64,000 bases of DNA from the IMG/VR virus record IMGVR_UViG_3300045135_002615, positions 186,001 through 250,000 of that record; one strand, 5' to 3'. The translations under genes were made by a program, and so were the position numbers. How positions within the stretch are numbered: position 1 is the first letter of the stretch; every line of letters begins with the position of its first letter. This document shows, piece after piece, positions 11,503 to 56,029 of the stretch. The notes beneath the pieces are model-generated. The model made no database searches. It saw nothing but the letters and a program-made list of their open reading frames with translations, and was not told the DNA's origin.

Positions 11503-11536
11503 GAAGGTTCGGTGACCTAGAGATAGGTCGAATGGC

Positions 11537-11592
11537 AAAAGCCCCCCTCTCCCAAGACTTCGGTCACTCAGGGAGAGGGGGGCTTTCTTTTT
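11537..11592. terminator. Bidirectional intrinsic terminator
   Basis: C-rich and G-rich inverted arms flanked by A and T runs, between convergent genes. Confidence 0.7.
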
Positions 11593-11771
11593 TCTACGAT
11601 CACATGAAGAGTACTGCCAATCATCTGAACAGAGATGACTCCACCTAAGTGGGTCTCTAGCTCTTTCAAGCCTTCTTCAGTTTGACGGCTTAATACGACC
11701 TTATCAAATCCCTTTGCCACTATGGGCTCAGGTCCTAATAGGATCACGGGGATTGTTTTATCTTCACTCAT
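11568..11771 (-). CDS. Small hypothetical protein
   Basis: AGGAGG RBS; ATA-N5-TTTAT at 11805-11817. Confidence 0.7.
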   Translation of the reverse strand: MSEDKTIPVILLGPEPIVAKGFDKVVLSRQTEEGLKELETHLGGVISVQMIGSTLHVIVEKRKPPSP

Positions 11772-11816
11772 AACTCACCTCCTGTCTCAGAGGTGGTCGT
11801 GACTATAAAAGCAGTA

Positions 11817-18721: not shown

Positions 18722-18907
18722 ATGAAAAGACATTTGACCCCACTCATCCTCAGCCACACCTCATCTCGCAGGTATGACCGACAGCGTCTCTTGAAGGCGA
18801 TTGATAAGCTGACCCCTGAAGAGCAAGCAGACCTATTTGCTATCCTCCAAGACAAGACCGAGGAAGCACAGAAGTACAAGACCTTATCCCGCAGACGCAT
18901 GTTCTAA
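18722..18907 (+). CDS. Small hypothetical protein
   Basis: AAAGGAG RBS; MKRHLT start resembles the MRHLT leaders. Confidence 0.6.
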   Translation: MKRHLTPLILSHTSSRRYDRQRLLKAIDKLTPEEQADLFAILQDKTEEAQKYKTLSRRRMF

Positions 18908-18959
18908 TAGGTCTTTTATCTCATAGACCTCTCTAACAGATGACAGAGAGGTCTATGAG

Positions 18960-19511
18960 ATGAGAAGAATAGCAAAAGCAAACGTAACACCGATCAGACA
19001 GAGGACACAGTTCTCTTGCGTGTCTACTTCAACGTGTATGGCACTCAATGCGGTCGGTGTTAAGTGTACCGAGGACGAGGTTAATGAGGTTATCGGTGCT
19101 CGTCCCATGCAAGGTGCAAGGTGGGAAGAGGTGCTCGCATGTGCTCAGTATTTCGGGTGTAGGGCAACGCTTACGACACCTGCAACTCTCACCCAAGTTA
19201 AGGCTTGGACTGACGCAGGTAAACCTGTTCTCATCGCATGGAACCCAGAGGGGCGGGATTGGAGCCATGCAAGTCTTATCTTTGATGTGACGGGTGAAAA
19301 GGGAAGCTATGTCGTCCATGTAGCTGATCCTAACATCCCTAACCCTGACAAGACAACCCGTGAGGTTAGTGAGGATGAGTTCTACTCAAAGTGGTACGAG
19401 AAGTGGCCTAACTATTTAGTACGTCGCCCCGCTCTCATGATTGAGCGAGAGGTCTGTGAGAATGGTAGGCAACTTATGGCGAGTAAGATCGCGTCTAAGT
19501 ACCTACGCTAA
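18960..19511 (+). CDS. C39-like cysteine peptidase
   Basis: Q...SC, H, ADP catalytic pattern; motif at 18907-18919; C-terminal KIASKYLR. Confidence 0.8.
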   Translation: MRRIAKANVTPIRQRTQFSCVSTSTCMALNAVGVKCTEDEVNEVIGARPMQGARWEEVLACAQYFGCRATLTTPATLTQVKAWTDAGKPVLIAWNPEGRDWSHASLIFDVTGEKGSYVVHVADPNIPNPDKTTREVSEDEFYSKWYEKWPNYLVRRPALMIEREVCENGRQLMASKIASKYLR

Positions 19512-33216: not shown

Positions 33217-33301
33217 TCGGAAATACATTTGTTCTCTTTTGTGGTTTTTCGCCATCCACAGATGGTTGATAGAAACTACTAAGGAGAACCTTAGATCAAG
33301 C

Positions 33302-33348
33302 AAAAAAAAGCTCCTCCACTTCCCTTAGATGGAAGCGGAGGAGCTTTT
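33302..33348. terminator. Bidirectional terminator
   Basis: AAAAGCTCCTCC...GGAGGAGCTTTT. Confidence 0.8.
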
Positions 33349-33374
33349 AGCTCAAGGTTAAGAGTGTTGTTTTC

Positions 33375-45642: not shown

Positions 45643-45754
45643 AGTTAACTCCTGTCTCCTATTCACTACAAGAGACCCTATAGATAATCTATCGTAAATT
45701 GGTCACCCCACCTCCGCATTGATATAAGTCCTTAAGATTACGAAAGGATATACA

Positions 45755-46372
45755 ATGCTTACACCCCAAGAGATTCTCTTTATCATCCTGTCCCTACTTG
45801 GGGCAGACAACGCTAAGGTCGATGATACAGCTAAAACCCGCATGGCTGAGCTGAGCCAAGCAATCTCTGACCATCAATCTGAGACAGTATCAGCACACAC
45901 GCTAATCGCGGTTAGCTTCGTTGAAGACCGCTTCTCCTATGACGGAGATCAAGGAGCAAACCACAAGGGTGCTTGTGGTCCTTATCAGCAGATCCCGAAG
46001 TGGGCTGCTGAGGAGGTCACTTGCTCCGACCTTGCAGACCCTCAAACTGCTACCCGTGTAGCAGTCAAGAGCATCAAATGGTTCTACAAGACCTTTGGTG
46101 AGAAGCTCGACACCCTCTGCCACTACAACGGTGGCATGGAGTGTGTTGGGGGTGCGGTTGACTACGCGGAGGATGTCAAGAAGACATACCGCAAGAGCAA
46201 GAGCCTTCTTAAGAGGTATCGCTCAAAGACACCCTCCCTCAAGACGACTATCAAGAAGGTTAAGACACGCAAAAAGAAGCGTGTCCACACCCCACCTCCA
46301 CCTACACTAGACTACGTTGGTCCCCCTCCTACCATCTATGGGGACTATGTTGGACCCCCTGACTCTATCTAA
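45755..46372 (+). CDS. Lytic transglycosylase-like exported protein
   Basis: A...VE.RF, GACGPYQ, HYNGG; basic and Pro-rich tail. Confidence 0.6.
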   Translation: MLTPQEILFIILSLLGADNAKVDDTAKTRMAELSQAISDHQSETVSAHTLIAVSFVEDRFSYDGDQGANHKGACGPYQQIPKWAAEEVTCSDLADPQTATRVAVKSIKWFYKTFGEKLDTLCHYNGGMECVGGAVDYAEDVKKTYRKSKSLLKRYRSKTPSLKTTIKKVKTRKKKRVHTPPPPTLDYVGPPPTIYGDYVGPPDSI

Positions 46373-46382
46373 GGAGCCCCCC

Positions 46383-46541
46383 ATGAAGTTCAAAATCTGC
46401 TTAGTCCTCATTCTCATCATCAAAGCGGTACTCCTCATTACCACTCTCTCACAGCCAGTGGTTTTCTCTGCTGACCTCTCAAGTGAGAAGTTCCCAGAGC
46501 CTTGCGTTGAGTTCATCCCTCAAGACCGCAAGTGTCCATAG
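46383..46541 (+). CDS. Small membrane or secreted peptide
   Basis: AAGGAG RBS; hydrophobic N-terminus. Confidence 0.5.
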   Translation: MKFKICLVLILIIKAVLLITTLSQPVVFSADLSSEKFPEPCVEFIPQDRKCP

Positions 46542-46589
46542 AAAAAAAAACTCCCCCCCCCCCTCCACTCATTAATATAAAGTAGTAAG

Positions 46590-46780
46590 AGGTAGTGGGT
46601 GAGGTTCCCTGAACCACCTTCAACTAGATGTAACATTCCTAGTTGAAGGTGGAGGGTAGAGCCCCCCCACGAGTTGACCCACCCAACTAAGTGGTCAGCA
46701 TAGAGCGTCAAGCTCACAACTTGAAACATCATAGGAGTTAATACTCCACACTAAAGGGCTCCCAATATGGGAGCTTTTAG
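46590..46780 (+). ncRNA. Candidate structured ncRNA
   Basis: Perfect 14-bp stem 46614-27/46639-52 with outer pairings, further hairpins, promoter-like motif upstream, terminator at 46751-46780. Confidence 0.5.
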
Positions 46781-46919
46781 TTTATTTAGGGTAGGGCATC
46801 CACAATGGATAAACTCATCTACCTATATGCGTCAGCGATCATTATTTCTGCTCTCGCTACTCACTACCTGCTAATCTCCCTCTTAATAAAAATCTTCTAC
46901 TGAAATCTTAAGGAAAAAA

Positions 46920-47210
46920 ATGATTTACTTTATTATTCTTGGGCTAGTCACGCTCGGCGTAGGTCTTTACCACGATGATATTCGCATCTTCTTTGGTATC
47001 TTCATCATCGGCATGACTGCGATGGCTCATCGAGCAGAGGAGGTGGTGACCTTCTCTGTGTGTGAGACCGAGGCTCAGAAGTTCGCACCTGTGGAGCGAC
47101 ACGGTCTTGAGGCTCTTAAGAAGGCTTACCCCTCACTTCAGTGTGAGGAGGTGAAACTGAGCCGAAGTGAGGCTGCCCGAATCCGCGAGGCGATCATTAA
47201 AACTCGTTGA
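46920..47210 (+). CDS. Small membrane protein
   Basis: Two N-terminal hydrophobic helices; AAGGA RBS. Confidence 0.7.
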   Translation: MIYFIILGLVTLGVGLYHDDIRIFFGIFIIGMTAMAHRAEEVVTFSVCETEAQKFAPVERHGLEALKKAYPSLQCEEVKLSRSEAARIREAIIKTR

Positions 47211-47234
47211 CAGAGGTGTGCTCCTTAGTATAAT
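47207..47234 (+). promoter_or_regulatory. Sigma70-type promoter for the tRNA region
   Basis: TTGACA-N16-TATAAT. Confidence 0.8.
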
Positions 47235-47275
47235 AGAGGTGCAGATAACGCCACCTCAAAAGAGGAACACATTCA

Positions 47276-47347
47276 GGTCCCATCGTCTAGTGGTCAGGAC
47301 ATCGGCCTTTCACGCCGAGAACACGGGTTCAAATCCCGTTGGGATCA
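47276..47347 (+). tRNA. tRNA-Glu (UUC)
   Basis: Cloverleaf; anticodon arm TCGGC-CTTTCAC-GCCGA; GGTTCAAATCC; CCA not encoded. Confidence 0.95.
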
Positions 47348-47715
47348 TTCTAACAAGCCCCTCAGCGGGCTTCTTTTTTTGGATTCACTAATGAACAAAG
47401 ATATTCGATCCCTCTCCTCCATCTTCGGAGGTCTTCCTAACTACCTCCAAAGGACAAAAGACTTCTCATGGACATGTATTGATAAGAGGGGGTATAAGGT
47501 TTCACTGTACTACACCCCTACAAAGCCAGGTGTGGTAGAGGTGTACGAGCCCCCCCTCATGGATGGGTATTAAGGTCGATTCCTTTGGGATTGGCTTTAT
47601 AGATATCTCCGATCTCCATCTTTTCTTTGAGAACAAAAACTACTAACTCTTGGAAGTGAGAGTCTGTAATAATCACTCACTTAGGGTGATTATTACTATA
47701 ACCTTTTCACATAGA

Positions 47716-47788
47716 GGGTTGTTAGCTCAATAGGTAGAGCAGCGGACTTTTAATCCGTTGGTTCAGGGTTCGAGTCCCTGACGACCCA
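47716..47788 (+). tRNA. tRNA-Lys (UUU)
   Basis: Cloverleaf; GCGGA-CTTTTAA-TCCGT; GGTTCGAGTCC; CCA not encoded. Confidence 0.95.
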
Positions 47789-47869
47789 TTACCCCATAGG
47801 CTCCGTAGCTAGGAGCATACGTTTTCAGCCACCCATTAGTAGGTGGCTTTTGTTTAGGAGAACAAACAA

Positions 47870-48124
47870 ATGCAGATCAAGAATCTTACACGCAGTTTCT
47901 TTTACTTTGACGGCAACATCACCGAGGCACTTGAGGAGTATGTTGTCAAGCATCACGGTCTTACCTTTGATGGTGACCTCATCATTGAGGACGAGCAGGG
48001 TCTGTGGTTCATCAGCCCAGGTGAGTACATCGTCAAGAGTGATGATGTGATCATTGGTGCATGTGACGCAAGCGGTTTCGCAGAGTACTCACTCTACGCC
48101 TCACAGATCGAGGTGGCACGATGA
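47870..48124 (+). CDS. Small hypothetical protein
   Basis: AGGAG RBS; PGEYIVK. Confidence 0.7.
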   Translation: MQIKNLTRSFFYFDGNITEALEEYVVKHHGLTFDGDLIIEDEQGLWFISPGEYIVKSDDVIIGACDASGFAEYSLYASQIEVAR

Positions 48125-48402
48125 AGAAGCTCCTCGCTGTACTCGCTCTCACCGCTCTTGCCACAGGTTGCACCGATGCCACAATCGGTGCTTATGGGTC
48201 TTACGGCTCACGGGGTCACGCCACTTGCTACTCAGGCGGCAAGGTCACTTTCAACGCGATCTCAACGGGTCGCGTGAAAGACCAAGAGAACTCAGACGGG
48301 TTCTCAGCCAAGTGGCAGGACGTGGGGTCTGATGGGAAACCTCAAGGACCTGTCTACTACGCCACGGTAAGTGGGCAGTGCATCATCAAGTACCTCGACT
48401 GA
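48121..48402 (+). CDS. Lipoprotein
   Basis: MKK, hydrophobic stretch, LATG|C lipobox. Confidence 0.75.
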   Translation: MKKLLAVLALTALATGCTDATIGAYGSYGSRGHATCYSGGKVTFNAISTGRVKDQENSDGFSAKWQDVGSDGKPQGPVYYATVSGQCIIKYLD

Positions 48403-49768
48403 TGATCACTTCAACACTAGCCAAGCTAGTGGCAACGCTGGTCGACTTGCGTAAAATACTCGCAAGACGACCCGCAGGGAAAGGCTGATAGAGTTCCTCT
48501 CTACTTAAGAGTTGGTCTTCAGTCAAATCCGCATTCCTAGCTACGGCTCTTAAGGGCTCTTTAAGAGCTTCATTAAGGGTTGGGGAGCTAGTCTCTATCT
48601 TGTATAGAGTTGGCAAAGCCCCCTCTACATATCCGTTCTTTAAAGCATCGGACATGGAGAGGAGGGCTTTTTCTGTTTGTACTCTCCTCACTCTACCCTC
48701 TGCTTCCGTATGACCACCTACTTTGAGCCTGATCAGTGAACCCGTTAGAGCATTAGCCCTCTGCCTCCACAAATCTTGTGTGTGGGTATGAGGGCTTTCT
48801 TGTGCTTCCTTTAAGAGCATCTCAGCTCTCTCTGCTGTCTTTTCAGCGTGTTCATCATAAGGGTATGTGATCATCTCATTGAAGTTAAGAACGCACTCAA
48901 AAGCGGATCCAAAGAACTCGGCTTTGAACTCACCATCAAGGTTAGGTTGGTGGACATGTCCTCCTGTAAATGCGGCGAAATCCTCCATCCACCCCATTCC
49001 CCATATGACTCTAGGGGCTTCTACGGCATGACAGTCGAGTACTCCCTTGTGCCTGTTTAGTTGGATTGTCTTGAGAGCCTGACCGCTAATGAAAGGGGCG
49101 ACGAGGACTAGTGGTCTGCCCTCAAATCCACCCATGAGCTCCATGATCGGCACGACCTGCTTCAAGTCTTTGAGGGGTTGGCTTGATAGGGCAAACATAG
49201 GTCCTTCTAGGTATGCCTCTTTATCTGTATGTATTCTTACTGATGAGTGTAGTGCCTCTGACTCAATGACCTCACACCCGACACCGATACCCTTCTCTAG
49301 CGTGATGTGTGTGGCTAGACCTCCACTCAGGTTGAGTGCCTCAGCGACCTTCTCAACACTTTCCCTATCTAAAGAACTCTCCATACCTATCTTGATAAGG
49401 GTATGTTCACTTGAGGGTAATGGTTTGATGTCTTTGATAGCCTCTAATACCGCATTATCGACTTGGTTAGTGTATGTCGGGTGTGGTGAGTCATACATGC
49501 GTGAGAAGCTCTTTAAAAGCCCCGTAGAGAGCAGGCAAGCAGTTTTAGCACCATCACCATTACCACATACCTCCAGGAGGTTGTATTGGACTATTTTTTG
49601 TATGATTGGGTTAGGGTAGTGCCATGCATTGAGTATGGACTTAGCGGAGGGGTTGTTCCATATTGAACCCCCTCTTTGCATCAATACGGTAGTCCCCTTT
49701 GCTTTGTGGGCGGCGAGCAAGATTTGTTCTACCTGTTTGATCGCGGGTATAAGATTATGGAACGACAT
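48386..49768 (-). CDS. Divergent GroEL-like chaperonin
   Basis: KGTTV, GDGAKT, RPLVLVA, AVEAP, D.A..TGG, LKVGG.TE.E, G.V.G, EPLR. Confidence 0.8.
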   Translation of the reverse strand: MSFHNLIPAIKQVEQILLAAHKAKGTTVLMQRGGSIWNNPSAKSILNAWHYPNPIIQKIVQYNLLEVCGNGDGAKTACLLSTGLLKSFSRMYDSPHPTYTNQVDNAVLEAIKDIKPLPSSEHTLIKIGMESSLDRESVEKVAEALNLSGGLATHITLEKGIGVGCEVIESEALHSSVRIHTDKEAYLEGPMFALSSQPLKDLKQVVPIMELMGGFEGRPLVLVAPFISGQALKTIQLNRHKGVLDCHAVEAPRVIWGMGWMEDFAAFTGGHVHQPNLDGEFKAEFFGSAFECVLNFNEMITYPYDEHAEKTAERAEMLLKEAQESPHTHTQDLWRQRANALTGSLIRLKVGGHTEAEGRVRRVQTEKALLSMSDALKNGYVEGALPTLYKIETSSPTLNEALKEPLRAVARNADLTEDQLLSREELYQPFPAGRLASILRKSTSVATSLASVEVIISRGT

Positions 49769-49799
49769 CGAGGATCTCCATGTGAAAGGACTATGAAAC

Positions 49800-50744
49800 A
49801 TGTCTTCATCCGTTATACAGACTAGATCATCAGCGATCAGCTATAATACACGAGCCGCTAATTCAGTAGGTTGGGGTGGGTCTATCCCCCCCGCAGCAAT
49901 AGAGGCTTTCCCAGGTCTTGCTAAAGACCCTTCAACCAATGACTTTGCATTAGCTGTGGAGGCCTTCCAAGAGAAGACTTTTGGTGCGGGTGCTTCAGTA
50001 GATGGGAAGATGGGGCGTGGTACATGGTCCGCTCTCCTGAAGCAGTATGATCGAGTAGATGATACACAGCCCTTTTGGACTATTAACGACAGGCGTGTCA
50101 ACGTGGAGATTGACCCCTCTGTGGAGGTTGTAAACTTTGATCAGCCAGGTGGTCTTGATCTACACCGATTTGGTCACTTCTCATCTCGTAAGCGACCCCC
50201 ACGCTTTATTGTGGTACATTGGGGCGGTCTTGACCCTCATCATTGTTACAGGGTATTCTCAAGCCCTGATCGTCAAGTGAGCTCTCATGCGGGTATTGGG
50301 GTCTCACCTGAAGGCACCGCTACGATCTATCAGTACCTCGACCTCAACCATAAGTCATGGCACGCAGGTTGGGCAAACTCATATTCTGTAGGTATTGATA
50401 TTTGTCAGCAACCTTCTCTTAGGTGGAAGGATCATTACATCAAGAATGGTTACAACGTCCAAGAGATGAAGAACATGACGGGCAGGGGCGATGCTAATGT
50501 TTTGACCCTTGATCCTAGAGTAGCAATCGCTACTCGTGAAGCCGTTAAGAGCCTCTGTAAGGTTCTTAACATCCCTTATCAGTTCCCATGTGGTTCAGAT
50601 GGTCAGAGCTATGAGGGTGGTTTTTATCATGGGGTAGTGGATAAGGATTATCTCACTAACTCCTTCACAGGTGTGATTGGGCATCATCATATCACACAGA
50701 AGAAGTGGGATTGTGCCTGTTGGTGGGACACTCTCTTTGGTTGA
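49800..50744 (+). CDS. N-acetylmuramoyl-L-alanine amidase with peptidoglycan-binding domain (endolysin-like)
   Basis: AFQ...VDGKMG..TW; IVVH, SSH, WHAG..N..SVGI, GHH...K.DC. Confidence 0.85.
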   Translation: MSSSVIQTRSSAISYNTRAANSVGWGGSIPPAAIEAFPGLAKDPSTNDFALAVEAFQEKTFGAGASVDGKMGRGTWSALLKQYDRVDDTQPFWTINDRRVNVEIDPSVEVVNFDQPGGLDLHRFGHFSSRKRPPRFIVVHWGGLDPHHCYRVFSSPDRQVSSHAGIGVSPEGTATIYQYLDLNHKSWHAGWANSYSVGIDICQQPSLRWKDHYIKNGYNVQEMKNMTGRGDANVLTLDPRVAIATREAVKSLCKVLNIPYQFPCGSDGQSYEGGFYHGVVDKDYLTNSFTGVIGHHHITQKKWDCACWWDTLFG

Positions 50745-54856: not shown

Positions 54857-55427
54857 GCCCAAACTCCCTTCGAGATACAGGCAGGTAGTCAAAGCCAGGT
54901 GACACGCTCTCCCCATCGGAGATCTTCTTGCCCTCTTGATCTACCTTCATGTTAAAGGTCGCCTTTTCAGCACATGGGCTGAATGTGGCGACCTCTTCTA
55001 TATTGTCCGCCCACGCCATGAGGTAGGTACTCCCCTCAAATGGATTACCCTTAAAGTCTGTGCGTAATCCATAAGCAAACACGGGGACTCCGAGTTCATC
55101 CGCAACCCGTGTTAAGTCATACACCTGTAGCTTATTCAAGAACTGAGACTCATCTACGAATATGACCTTGAGCTCTCTTCGTGCATGCTCTTCAGACACT
55201 ATCTCAAACAAAGAGCTGTGCTCTTTAAGGGGGGTGGCCTCATGCTTAAAGCCCACCCTTGAAGCCACCTGAGCGACACCATCCCTTTTAGCTGCTATAG
55301 ATGGTATGAGCATCATGAAAGGGATTGATCTCTCATTACAAGAGTGAGCCCTCATAAGGAGGTTTGCGGTCTTACCCGCATTGACTGTTGAGTAGATAAA
55401 GTTTAACAAGGTGACATCTCTCTCCAT
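54846..55427 (-). CDS. tdk: Thymidine kinase
   Basis: NAGKT, ASRVG, VDESQF, YGLRTDF...FEGS. Confidence 0.93.
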   Translation of the reverse strand: MERDVTLLNFIYSTVNAGKTANLLMRAHSCNERSIPFMMLIPSIAAKRDGVAQVASRVGFKHEATPLKEHSSLFEIVSEEHARRELKVIFVDESQFLNKLQVYDLTRVADELGVPVFAYGLRTDFKGNPFEGSTYLMAWADNIEEVATFSPCAEKATFNMKVDQEGKKISDGESVSPGFDYLPVSRREFGLSP

Positions 55428-56029
55428 CCAAAATAGGATGATACTTTGTGGCGAACCTCTTGCACGAGGTTTTTTACTTTTTTACTATCCCACCCATATG
55501 TCCTAGCAATGTGTGAAGACTTCATCCCACCCATCATCGCGTCATACACTTTAAGGGCATCATCGGTGAAGCGACTTCTTACCTCTTCCATGATCATGTC
55601 ATCCGAGGGGTCTTGGTCATAAGACAAGTCCATAGAGTGTGAGTGAGAGCTTGAGATGTCCTCCTCAACACCCAACATGGCTTTAGAGCTGTCTTTACGG
55701 TGTTTATTGATGACGTTCATTACGATGCAGTTCATCACCATGACCACATAGGTTGAGAAAGCTGACTTCTCAGGGTCATAGGGACAAGAACCCTCATTAC
55801 GGATCATAATCCCTTTGTAGACTTCTTGTAGGACATCTTCCGGATCAAGTCCTTCCTTAGATACGGAGTGGGCTTGTCTCTTATAGAAGATAAGGCGAAC
55901 GTCTTGACTTCTTGTATCAAGGTCAATCCCTAGTTTGCGGGGTTTGACTTGATCAAAACTGAAGGATGCGATAGGAGTGATCCCGATTTGCCATTGACGT
56001 GTGGCTTCAATCCCTGAATAACTCGACAT
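55403..56029 (-). CDS. Sigma70-family sigma factor
   Basis: Region 2 EDVLQEV...YDPEKSAFSTY; C-terminal HTH. Confidence 0.75.
   Translation of the reverse strand: MSSYSGIEATRQWQIGITPIASFSFDQVKPRKLGIDLDTRSQDVRLIFYKRQAHSVSKEGLDPEDVLQEVYKGIMIRNEGSCPYDPEKSAFSTYVVMVMNCIVMNVINKHRKDSSKAMLGVEEDISSSHSHSMDLSYDQDPSDDMIMEEVRSRFTDDALKVYDAMMGGMKSSHIARTYGWDSKKVKNLVQEVRHKVSSYFGWREMSPC

What the first reader, a model, noticed from the sequence alone, without database searches (positions are those of the whole stretch)
46585..46785. Candidate novel structured RNA
About 190 nt with no credible ORF lie between a promoter-like motif and a terminator. There is a perfect 14-bp stem CCACCTTCAACTAG/CTAGTTGAAGGTGG extended by CCCT/AGGG and GTGGG/CCCAC, then hairpins TGACC/GGTCA, TCAAG/CTTGA and GGAGT/ACTCC. 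It is near the tRNA genes, and I do not recognise the family.
Basis: partly seen in the sequence, partly recalled or inferred. Interest (0 to 1): 0.6.

Follow-up and report, generated by a model that had tools for sequence, protein, structure and literature searches.

The report
Structured leader RNA in a jumbo phage
An uncultured marine jumbo phage has a conserved, strongly folded non-coding stretch of about 200 bases with its own promoter and terminator, lying just ahead of two tiny membrane-protein genes; it is probably a regulatory leader or small RNA of a kind already seen in phages, but it matches no catalogued RNA family and nobody has shown that it is transcribed.

Summary
Window 46585-46785 folds far better than shuffles on the + strand (z -7.0). 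It is the most structured of 42 intergenic gaps in this 296.6-kb phage genome. It has no conserved ORF and no Rfam, tRNA or tmRNA match. An ~85% identical relative from other metagenomes keeps the whole fold (z -7.7). Placing its 25 substitutions at random would cost about 22 kcal/mol, whereas the observed set costs about 5 (P~0.007). The DNA just behind the terminator is unalignable. Formal covariation is thin: one double compensatory change, in the terminator. The upstream motif belongs to a genome-wide phage promoter class (C-rich tract plus ATTNATATAAR). That class normally sits 24-46 nt before a start codon; here it sits 227 nt before one, with a terminator between. Two conserved small membrane-protein genes follow without a promoter of their own. 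Best reading: a promoter-proximal, terminated, structured leader RNA, as in phiKZ 5'UTR short RNAs or lambda 6S/StxS. Whether it acts in cis or in trans is open. The nearby tRNAs have their own promoter and look incidental. No RNA data exist. It is a new RNA in a known kind of arrangement, of moderate interest.

The parts
46542..46563 (+). A9-CT-C11 tract directly after the stop codon of ORF52. The C-rich run is the upstream element shared by the genome's 'class A' promoters.
   Evidence: Read. C-rich tracts 12-30 nt before TATAAR recur at about 10 intergenic sites. The tract lengths differ in L003.
46570..46599 (+). Promoter core and start region, CATTAATATAAAGTAGTAAGAGGTAGTGGG. The -10-like TATAAA lies at 46576-46581. 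The inferred start is about 46587-46589.
   Evidence: The block is 30/30 identical in L003, against about 85% for the rest. TATAA[AG] is enriched in non-coding DNA: 88 of 225 sites lie in the 7.5% of the genome outside ORFs. A more distant lineage (L004) has ATTCATATAAGTG at the same position, behind its small ORF. The start site is inferred, not measured.
46588..46787 (+). Predicted non-coding RNA or leader of about 200 nt.
   Evidence: Folds. No conserved ORF on either strand. Indels of -2, +2 and -1 nt occur in L003.
46595..46670 (+). H1, a long composite hairpin. It is made of GUGGG/CCCAC, an internal part, CCCU/AGGG and the 14-bp core (46614-46627 with 46639-46652), with the apical loop AUGUAACAUUC.
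   Evidence: In L003, changes inside it give A-U to G-U, G.U to A-U and G.U to G-C. The outermost pair of the 14-bp stem is lost, and one inner pair is lost on both sides together.
46673..46699 (+). H2, GUUGACC(C)AC / GUGGUCAGC, with the invariant 8-nt loop CCAACUAA.
   Evidence: Its only change is A-U to G-U, in L003 and L015.
46703..46715 (+). H3, GAGC-GUCAA-GCUC.
   Evidence: It is extended to 6 bp in L003 and L015 by a 2-nt insertion on the 5' side and an A to U change on the 3' side.
46734..46747 (+). H4, GGAGU-UAAU-ACUCC.
   Evidence: The stem is invariant in three sequences; one loop base changes.
46751..46787 (+). Intrinsic terminator: CUAAAGGGCUCCCA-AUA-UGGGAGCUUUUAG followed by UUUAUUU.
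   Evidence: Found by the terminator scan. One pair reads G.U in the window, G-C in L003 and A-U in L015. Predicted pairing probability exceeds 0.999, with no competing antiterminator in either sequence. The next 19 nt are only 21% identical in L003.
45755..46541 (+). Upstream genes: an SLT-domain transglycosylase (45755-46372) and a 52-aa membrane or secreted ORF (46383-46541). They have their own class A promoter near 45725 and no terminator before the element.
   Evidence: Pfam SLT, E 2.4e-6. Differences from L003 fall mostly at third codon positions. Promoter listing.
46805..47210 (+). Downstream genes with no promoter of their own: a 32-aa single-TM ORF (46805-46903) and a 96-aa two-TM ORF (46920-47210).
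   Evidence: Both are conserved in L003 and L015, with an in-frame indel and the same length. No family match. No promoter-like site lies between the terminator and 46805.
47207..47347 (+). Perfect sigma-70 consensus promoter (47207-47234) and tRNA-Glu(UUC) (47276-47347). This is a separate transcription unit.

Best explanation
The locus is a promoter-proximal, terminated, structured leader RNA of a marine jumbo phage.

A phage 'class A' promoter starts a + strand transcript near 46588. Its parts are a C-rich tract and a -10-like TATAAA at 46576-46581. The first ~165 nt fold into four helices: H1, a ~27-bp composite hairpin, then H2, H3 and H4. H1-H3 may be closed into a junction by weak pairing between the 5' end and the conserved CAACUU linker. 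A fifth hairpin followed by a U-rich tail is an intrinsic terminator.

Most transcripts should stop there and give a stable RNA of about 200 nt. The fraction that reads through is the only visible source of mRNA for the two small membrane-protein genes behind it (ORF32 and ORF96). The terminator therefore acts as an attenuator.

The conserved fold is the regulatory part. It most likely binds a factor that sets read-through or RNA stability, and the terminated product may also act in trans.

Shown: the structure, its conservation, the strand, the absence of coding, the promoter class, the terminator hairpin, and the lack of another promoter for the downstream genes.

Inferred: transcription itself, the start site, termination efficiency, read-through, and any binding partner.
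For: Structure:
- z is -7.0 in the window and -7.7 in L003.
- It is the top-ranked of 42 intergenic gaps and 9th of 5929 genome windows.

Strand:
- The + strand folds better than the - strand in both sequences: -83.5 against -79.7, and -85.6 against -78.0 kcal/mol.
- All variable pairs pass through G.U on the + strand, which would be A.C mismatches on the - strand.
- The U-rich tail and all neighbouring genes are on the + strand.

Selection on the fold:
- L003's 25 substitutions leave an MFE of -78.3 kcal/mol, and the real L003 sequence with its indels folds at -85.6.
- The same substitution spectrum placed at random gives -61.4 +/- 5.6; 0.7% of trials do as well.
- The element is about 85% identical, while the 19 nt after the terminator are 21% identical.
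- One terminator pair is G.U, G-C and A-U in the three sequences.

Promoter:
- The 30-nt block is identical in L003.
- TATAAR is about 5-fold enriched in non-coding DNA.
- Sites with a C-rich tract and ATTNATATAAR lie 24-46 nt before start codons elsewhere in the genome.
- The L004 lineage has the same motif in the same place.

Leader role:
- No promoter lies between the terminator and ORF32/ORF96.
- Both ORFs are conserved as coding.

Precedent:
- In phiKZ and other virulent phages, 42 terminators lie inside 5'UTRs and yield abundant short RNAs; species of 71 and 141 nt were confirmed by northern blot (PMC10914365).
- The terminated PR'-tR' transcripts of lambdoid phages (lambda 6S RNA, StxS) precede late and lysis genes and can act as sRNAs (PMC7547250).
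Against: - No RNA data: no RNA run holds the locus.
- Only two close relatives, one of them partial, so formal covariation is not significant.
- No alternative antiterminator pairing is predicted, so nothing shows that termination is conditional.
- No Q-type antiterminator gene was found.
- Transcripts from the upstream SLT promoter would also cross the element, so the downstream genes need not depend on this promoter.
- The U-tract is interrupted, most so in L003, so terminator strength is uncertain.
- The host and the RNA polymerase that reads class A promoters are unknown.
Confidence: 0.5

Rival explanations
1. It is a free-standing, trans-acting small RNA gene. The ~200-nt terminated transcript is the functional product. 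It pairs with host or phage mRNAs through conserved loops, or it titrates a protein. Read-through is irrelevant.
For: It has its own promoter and a strong terminator hairpin with no competing structure. The fold is far more elaborate than termination needs. The H2 loop is invariant and the H1 loop nearly so. An A/U-rich single strand precedes the last hairpins, as in many Hfq-type sRNAs (sequence). StxS shows that such terminated phage transcripts can be true sRNAs (PMC7547250).
Against: No complementarity to the phage genome beyond chance: the longest match is 13 nt, inside a gene and on the wrong strand. The host is unknown, so host targets cannot be tested. ORF32 and ORF96 would then be left without a visible promoter, other than read-through from this same unit.
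Confidence: 0.25
2. It is the 3' UTR or intercistronic processing and stability module of the SLT-ORF52 operon. The long H1 duplex would be an RNase III-type processing site, as in T7 early mRNA. The other hairpins would protect against 3' exonucleases, and the last hairpin would terminate the operon.
For: No terminator lies between ORF52's stop codon and the element, so transcripts from the promoter at about 45725 must run into it. H1 is a ~27-bp interrupted duplex, long enough for RNase III (RNase III substrate length is established knowledge). Long hairpins are common at gene ends in this genome.
Against: This does not explain the perfectly conserved class A promoter placed immediately before the structure. 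The genome's other long hairpins are single terminators with T-runs, not five-helix arrays.
Confidence: 0.15
3. It is a DNA-level element, such as an operator or other protein-binding palindrome, an origin or a packaging signal, and not an RNA.
For: A perfect 14-bp inverted repeat is also a DNA palindrome. The - strand also folds better than shuffles, at z -5.4.
Against: In L003 the two changes in the 5' arm have no matching change in the 3' arm. One of them is tolerated only as an RNA G.U pair on the + strand. G.U pairs occur throughout on the + strand only. There are no iterons, AT-rich unwinding region or repeats, and no second copy in the genome.
Confidence: 0.05
4. It is not a functional element. 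It would be a chance or relic structure, for example a decayed gene or the annotated 70-aa - strand ORF, conserved only because the relatives are close.
For: Only about 15% divergence is available, and the covariation statistics are not significant. The JGI annotation calls a 70-aa gene here.
Against: The - strand ORF is broken in L003. Random placement of the observed substitutions destroys the fold. The adjacent spacer has diverged beyond alignment while the element has not. The element diverges less (12.6% substitutions) than SLT third codon positions (36 of 205, 17.6%).
Confidence: 0.05

Closest known systems
5'UTR-derived short RNAs made by premature termination in virulent Pseudomonas phages (phiKZ T102/P112 at 71 nt, TU237 at 141 nt; PMC10914365)
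   Same: A jumbo or virulent phage with a promoter, then a structured transcript under 250 nt ended by an intrinsic terminator just upstream of protein genes, which are reached only by read-through. Function is unknown there as well.
   Different: No sequence or Rfam relationship. The phiKZ RNAs are shown by cappable-seq and northern blot, whereas this one is only predicted. This one is longer, with five helices.
Lambda 6S RNA and StxS: the PR'-tR' terminated leader of lambdoid late operons (PMC7547250)
   Same: A promoter, a short non-coding transcript (lambda 6S length of about 194 nt is from my own knowledge), an intrinsic terminator, and then genes that include lysis functions. The terminated by-product can be a trans-acting sRNA.
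   Different: No Q antiterminator homologue is present. The phage is not lambdoid. A lysis role for the downstream genes is only a guess. This fold is more elaborate, and no processing or Hfq data exist.
HK022 put RNA (a cis-acting, RNA-mediated processive antiterminator; own knowledge, reviewed in PMC4496710)
   Same: Promoter-proximal stem-loops in the nascent RNA, lying upstream of terminators, with no need for an alternative terminator/antiterminator fold.
   Different: put is two specific stem-loops of about 70 nt. No similarity was tested or seen. There is no evidence that this RNA modifies RNA polymerase.
T4 stable RNAs C and D encoded in the tRNA gene cluster (own knowledge; no open paper found)
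   Same: Small stable RNAs of unknown function encoded by a large virulent phage next to tRNA genes.
   Different: The T4 species are co-transcribed and processed with the tRNAs. Here the element has its own promoter and terminator, and two ORFs and a separate promoter lie between it and the tRNAs.

Membership tests
Any Rfam 15 family | Covariance-model score at or above the family's gathering threshold | tested here: not met
   Only the two tRNAs pass in the whole window. With permissive settings on 46300-47000, the best hit is an insect lncRNA model without structure, at 22 bits against a threshold of 50.
tRNA / tmRNA / tRNA-like | Cloverleaf or tmRNA detected by ARAGORN or RF00005 | tested here: not met
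   ARAGORN and Rfam find only tRNA-Glu and tRNA-Lys, at 47276 and 47716.
Riboswitch or classical attenuator leader | Mutually exclusive terminator and antiterminator pairings | tested here: not met
   Folding up to the terminator's 3' arm leaves its 5' arm unpaired. The terminator forms with P over 0.999 in both the window and L003.
Riboswitch or classical attenuator leader | Structured leader plus intrinsic terminator between a promoter and the regulated genes | tested here: met
   Promoter at 46576-46581, terminator at 46751-46787, ORF32 at 46805, and no promoter in between.
Lambdoid PR'-6S-tR' / Q antitermination module | A Q-family antiterminator gene in the genome | tested here: not met
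   PF06530 and PF03589 find nothing in the 296.6-kb record, while control genomes give hits.
Lambdoid PR'-6S-tR' / Q antitermination module | A constitutive promoter followed by a ~200-nt terminated transcript ahead of late or lysis genes | tested here: inconclusive
   The layout is met in silico. A lysis role for the neighbours rests only on the SLT domain, small TM ORFs, a weak Rz-like lipoprotein hit (E 0.007) and an amidase nearby.
Phage 5'UTR-derived short RNAs (premature termination) | A mapped transcription start and a mapped 3' end within the 5'UTR, with a short transcript under 250 nt | not testable with these tools
   No RNA run holds the locus. Only the sequence signals are present.
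Conserved structured RNA (general criterion) | Statistically supported covarying base pairs | tested here: inconclusive
   Three sequences give 58 pairs: 1 with changes on both sides and 7 with wobble-type one-sided changes, all cells paired. 333 of 500 shuffles do as well. The substitution-placement simulation supports selection on the fold, P about 0.007.
RNase III processing site | About two turns of mostly continuous duplex RNA | tested here: met
   H1 is predicted as about 27 bp with small internal loops. Cleavage itself is not testable here.

The most novel reading that the evidence does not exclude
The element founds a new family of phage regulatory RNAs. In this reading, a junction-forming leader binds a phage or host factor (RNA polymerase, a protein or a small molecule). 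That binding decides whether transcription passes the terminator into two small holin-like membrane-protein genes next to a transglycosylase. It would be an RNA-based checkpoint for late or lysis functions in a jumbo phage that has no Q-type antiterminator.
Probability: 0.12. Interest if true: 0.6.

Novelty: new member of a known kind. Interest (0 to 1): 0.35.

Why it matters
Regulatory RNAs of virulent and jumbo phages are barely charted. The few known cases come from transcript mapping in cultured Pseudomonas phages, and their functions are unknown. This locus is a clean, sequence-only example from an uncultured marine jumbo phage, with a defined promoter class, fold and terminator. It could be tested directly in vitro, and it offers a handle on how such phages gate small membrane-protein genes.

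It also corrects a database annotation that calls a spurious 70-aa gene here.

Its reach is limited. The family is so far confined to one narrow phage lineage, and nothing yet shows what it does.

Tried and rejected
Searches for a known family:
- Rfam at gathering and at permissive thresholds found nothing.
- ARAGORN found no extra tRNA or tmRNA.

Searches for more homologues:
- blastn against 50,697 phage records hit only the tRNA.
- Protein-anchored scans of viral contigs with the SLT and GroEL-like genes found no close relatives.
- An SLT profile scan of viral and metagenome contigs gave only relatives at 28-36% identity. In the one checked (L007), the next ORF follows the SLT gene directly, with no intergenic gap. 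The covariance model found nothing in any of them, nor in the one whole record that could be searched.
- Exact-pattern scans for H1, H2 and the promoter block in viral contigs, and for H1 in 185,579 prokaryote genomes, gave 0 hits.
- Word searches with the SLT and ORF96 proteins gave only the L003/L015 lineage and the short L004/L005 contigs.
- Identity look-ups with the small ORFs gave no further contigs.
- The L004/L005 contigs end 48 nt after the promoter, so that lineage's RNA body could not be read.

Other tests:
- Second copy in the own genome: none.
- Antisense targets in the phage genome: nothing beyond chance.
- Antiterminator alternative fold: none.
- Coding potential: the - strand 70-aa frame is broken in L003; a 15-codon GTG frame is not conserved; a 5-codon frame is treated as chance (reading of the sequence).
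- Q antiterminators and single- or multi-subunit phage RNA polymerases: no hits. The T7-type search had no positive control, so it is uninformative.
- ORF96 function: Pfam, PHROGs and the protein atlas were all uninformative.
- CAACU occurs three times in the element (46621, 46684, 46717), all conserved. About one such 5-mer triple is expected by chance in 200 nt, so I do not lean on it.

Full report
**Where the window lies.** The window is bases 186001-250000 of a 296,642-bp IMG/VR virus record, 47% G+C, estimated 95% complete. DNA runs that hold it are seawater, estuary and other aquatic metagenomes. It has no close relative among 50,697 deposited phages. The genome carries 11 tRNA genes in three clusters. 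I found no recognisable phage RNA polymerase. There is a weak sigma-70 region-2 match in ORF 55403-56029, at 19 bits and below Pfam's cut-off.

**The observation.** The 201-nt stretch folds at -83.5 kcal/mol on the + strand, against -51.6 +/- 4.5 for dinucleotide shuffles (z -7.0). On the - strand it folds at -79.7 (z -5.4).

- In a scan of 5929 overlapping 200-nt windows of the genome, it ranks 9th on the + strand after correction for G+C.
- Among 42 intergenic gaps of at least 150 nt, it has the lowest z-score (-6.8).
- The other highly structured gaps I looked at are dominated by single long terminator hairpins of 12-21 bp followed by T-runs. This locus has five helices, and only the last one is followed by a T-run.
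- Rfam has no match at gathering or permissive thresholds. ARAGORN finds only tRNA-Glu(UUC) at 47276-47347 and tRNA-Lys(UUU) at 47716-47788.

**Relatives.** Contigs of other metagenomes laid on the region revealed a relative about 87% identical, found in two independent studies.

- The neighbouring SLT protein led to a 2233-nt Logan contig, L003, with SLT 95% identical. L003 spans the whole element.
- ORF96 led to a second contig, L015, which starts inside the element at window 46639.
- A third lineage (L004/L005, SLT 59-62% identical) is known only from ~1-kb contigs that stop 48 nt after the promoter motif.
- No other homologue turned up in any collection, and there is no second copy in the genome.

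**Conservation.**

- L003 is about 85% identical across the element, which is similar to the flanking small ORFs. The 19 nt between the terminator and the next start codon are only 21% identical.
- A 30-nt block containing the promoter motif and the first bases of the RNA (46570-46599) is identical.
- The element differs by indels of -2, +2 and -1 nt, and no ORF is shared on either strand. The 70-aa - strand frame that the JGI annotation calls a gene is broken in L003.
- By contrast, SLT and ORF52 show clear third-position bias: 36 of 47 and 14 of 20 differences. ORF32 has too few differences to tell (5, 0 and 4 by codon position), but it keeps its frame through a 3-nt indel and is 29/33 identical in protein.

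**Is the fold conserved?**

- L003 folds into the same architecture at -85.6 kcal/mol (z -7.7). The consensus fold has 58 pairs, all formed in both sequences.
- I applied L003's 25 substitutions to the window sequence. The MFE stayed at -78.3 kcal/mol. Three hundred random placements of the same substitution spectrum gave -61.4 +/- 5.6, and 0.7% did as well.
- Variable pairs go A-U to G-U (H1 and H2), G.U to A-U and G.U to G-C (H1 and the terminator).
- One terminator pair is G.U in the window, G-C in L003 and A-U in L015, which is a true double change.
- H3 is lengthened from 4 to 6 bp by an insertion on one side and a substitution on the other.
- With three near-identical sequences the formal covariation statistics are not significant: 333 of 500 shuffles reach the observed values. 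The case for selection on structure therefore rests on the simulation and on the contrast with the unalignable spacer, not on covariation.
Both arms change without compensation.

**Strand.** The + strand is favoured by four observations: the energies in both sequences; the wobble pairs, which would be A.C mismatches on the - strand; the U-rich tail; and the orientation of every gene from 45755 to 48402.

**Promoter.**

- TATAA[AG] occurs 225 times in the genome, and 88 of those lie in the 7.5% not covered by a crude ORF model. Related heptamers are among the most intergenic-enriched words, as are C7/G7 runs.
- One subclass, which I call class A, has a C-rich tract 12-30 nt upstream and the core ATT(N)ATATAAG(T). 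In this class the -10-like hexamer lies 24-46 nt before a start codon at about ten sites. One of them is the SLT gene's own promoter, at about window 45725.
- The site at 46553-46581 is a textbook member, with an A-run, C11 and CATTAATATAAAG. Its next start codon, however, is 227 nt away, with a terminator in between.
- The start site (about 46587-46589) is inferred from spacing only.
- A second promoter-like class, TATAAA-N4-CTAT, is also visible.

**Terminator and leader logic.**

- The last hairpin (46751-46780) is followed by UUUAUUU.
- When the RNA is folded up to the terminator's 3' arm, the 5' arm stays free. In the full RNA the terminator forms with probability above 0.999, in both sequences. 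No antiterminator alternative is visible.
- Behind it lie ORF32 (one TM helix) and ORF96 (two TM helices and a charged tail). Both are conserved as genes. Neither has any promoter-like sequence of its own.
- The next promoter is the perfect TTGACA-16-TATAAT at 47207-47234, which serves tRNA-Glu.
- Upstream, no terminator separates SLT-ORF52 from the element.
- The element is therefore three things at once: the 3' end of the upstream unit, a short unit of its own, and the leader of ORF32/ORF96.
- The neighbourhood holds an SLT transglycosylase, small membrane ORFs, a lipoprotein with a weak Rz-like hit, and an amidase at 49800-50744. That hints at cell-wall or lysis functions, but it is only a hint.

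**Interpretation.**

- The best-supported reading is a promoter-proximal, terminated, structured leader RNA.
- The same layout has been mapped experimentally in phiKZ and other virulent phages. There, 42 terminators sit inside 5'UTRs and give abundant short RNAs of unknown function (PMC10914365).
- In lambdoid phages the terminated PR'-tR' transcript (lambda 6S RNA, StxS) precedes late and lysis genes and can itself be a trans-acting sRNA (PMC7547250).
- Membership of the lambdoid system is not supported, because no Q-family gene is found.
- A riboswitch-type switch is not supported either.
- My evidence cannot settle whether the fold works in cis (setting read-through or stability), in trans, or as an RNase III-type processing site. 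I weight these 0.5, 0.25 and 0.15. A DNA-level role and 'no function' get 0.05 each.
- I found no antisense target in the phage genome. The host is unknown.

**Verdict.** The interpretation, 'novel structured RNA', is partly supported: the structure, conservation and novelty of sequence hold, but expression is untested and covariation is thin. The arrangement is of a known kind, and the link to the tRNAs is incidental. Interest is moderate to low (0.35). It is a new member of a known kind.

Noticed in passing
window 45690-45730, and genome-wide (e.g. G000 9827, 12283, 143979, 145264, 169682, 282966): A phage promoter class ('class A'): a C-rich tract, often behind an A/T run, then ATT(N)ATATAAG(T). 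The -10-like hexamer lies 24-46 nt before start codons, and the leaders that follow are A/C-rich (..TAAGAAACAACAAC..). The SLT gene uses one.
   Followed up: partly
window 11806, 12725, 31064(-), 53204(-), and others in G000: A second intergenic motif, TATAAA-N4-CTAT (e.g. TATAAAaagACTAT). It is often just behind an inverted repeat and next to a divergent gene start. It may be a separate temporal promoter class.
   Followed up: no
window 47207-47234: A perfect sigma-70 consensus promoter (TTGACA, 16 nt, TATAAT; 12 of 12) directly in front of tRNA-Glu(UUC). This implies that the host RNA polymerase is used.
   Followed up: no
window 47348-47715: The stretch between tRNA-Glu and tRNA-Lys is replaced in the relatives by about 323-332 nt of unrelated sequence that encodes a different small ORF. 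It is a variable slot flanked by two conserved tRNA genes.
   Followed up: partly
window 46520-46732 (-): The public (JGI) gene call places a 70-aa protein on the - strand over the structured element. The frame is broken in the relative, so the call is probably spurious.
   Followed up: yes
window 46920-47210: ORF96 keeps its length and its two N-terminal TM helices, but it is only 58/96 identical to the relative's copy, while the SLT gene 600 nt away is 95% identical. Its C-terminal half evolves very fast.
   Followed up: partly
window 46542-46563: The homopolymer tracts A9 and C11 in front of the promoter differ in length in the relative (A9..C6). Such tracts can shift by slippage and could tune promoter strength.
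   Followed up: no
window 33217-33374, 11503-11816, 18900-18960: Other very stable intergenic folds (z about -5 to -6.5). Most are single perfect hairpins of 12-21 bp with T-runs, that is, unusually long terminators. The region 33217-33290 has an extra 23-bp irregular hairpin.
   Followed up: partly
window 55403-56029 (-): A 208-aa ORF with a weak Sigma70 region-2 match (19 bits, below the cut-off). It is a possible phage sigma factor that could read the TATAAR promoters.
   Followed up: partly
window 48121-50744: A lipoprotein with a weak Rz-like spanin hit (48121-48402), a divergent GroEL-like chaperonin (48386-49801, - strand) and an Amidase_2 peptidoglycan hydrolase (49800-50744) lie close to the SLT gene. 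This may be a cell-wall or lysis neighbourhood.
   Followed up: partly
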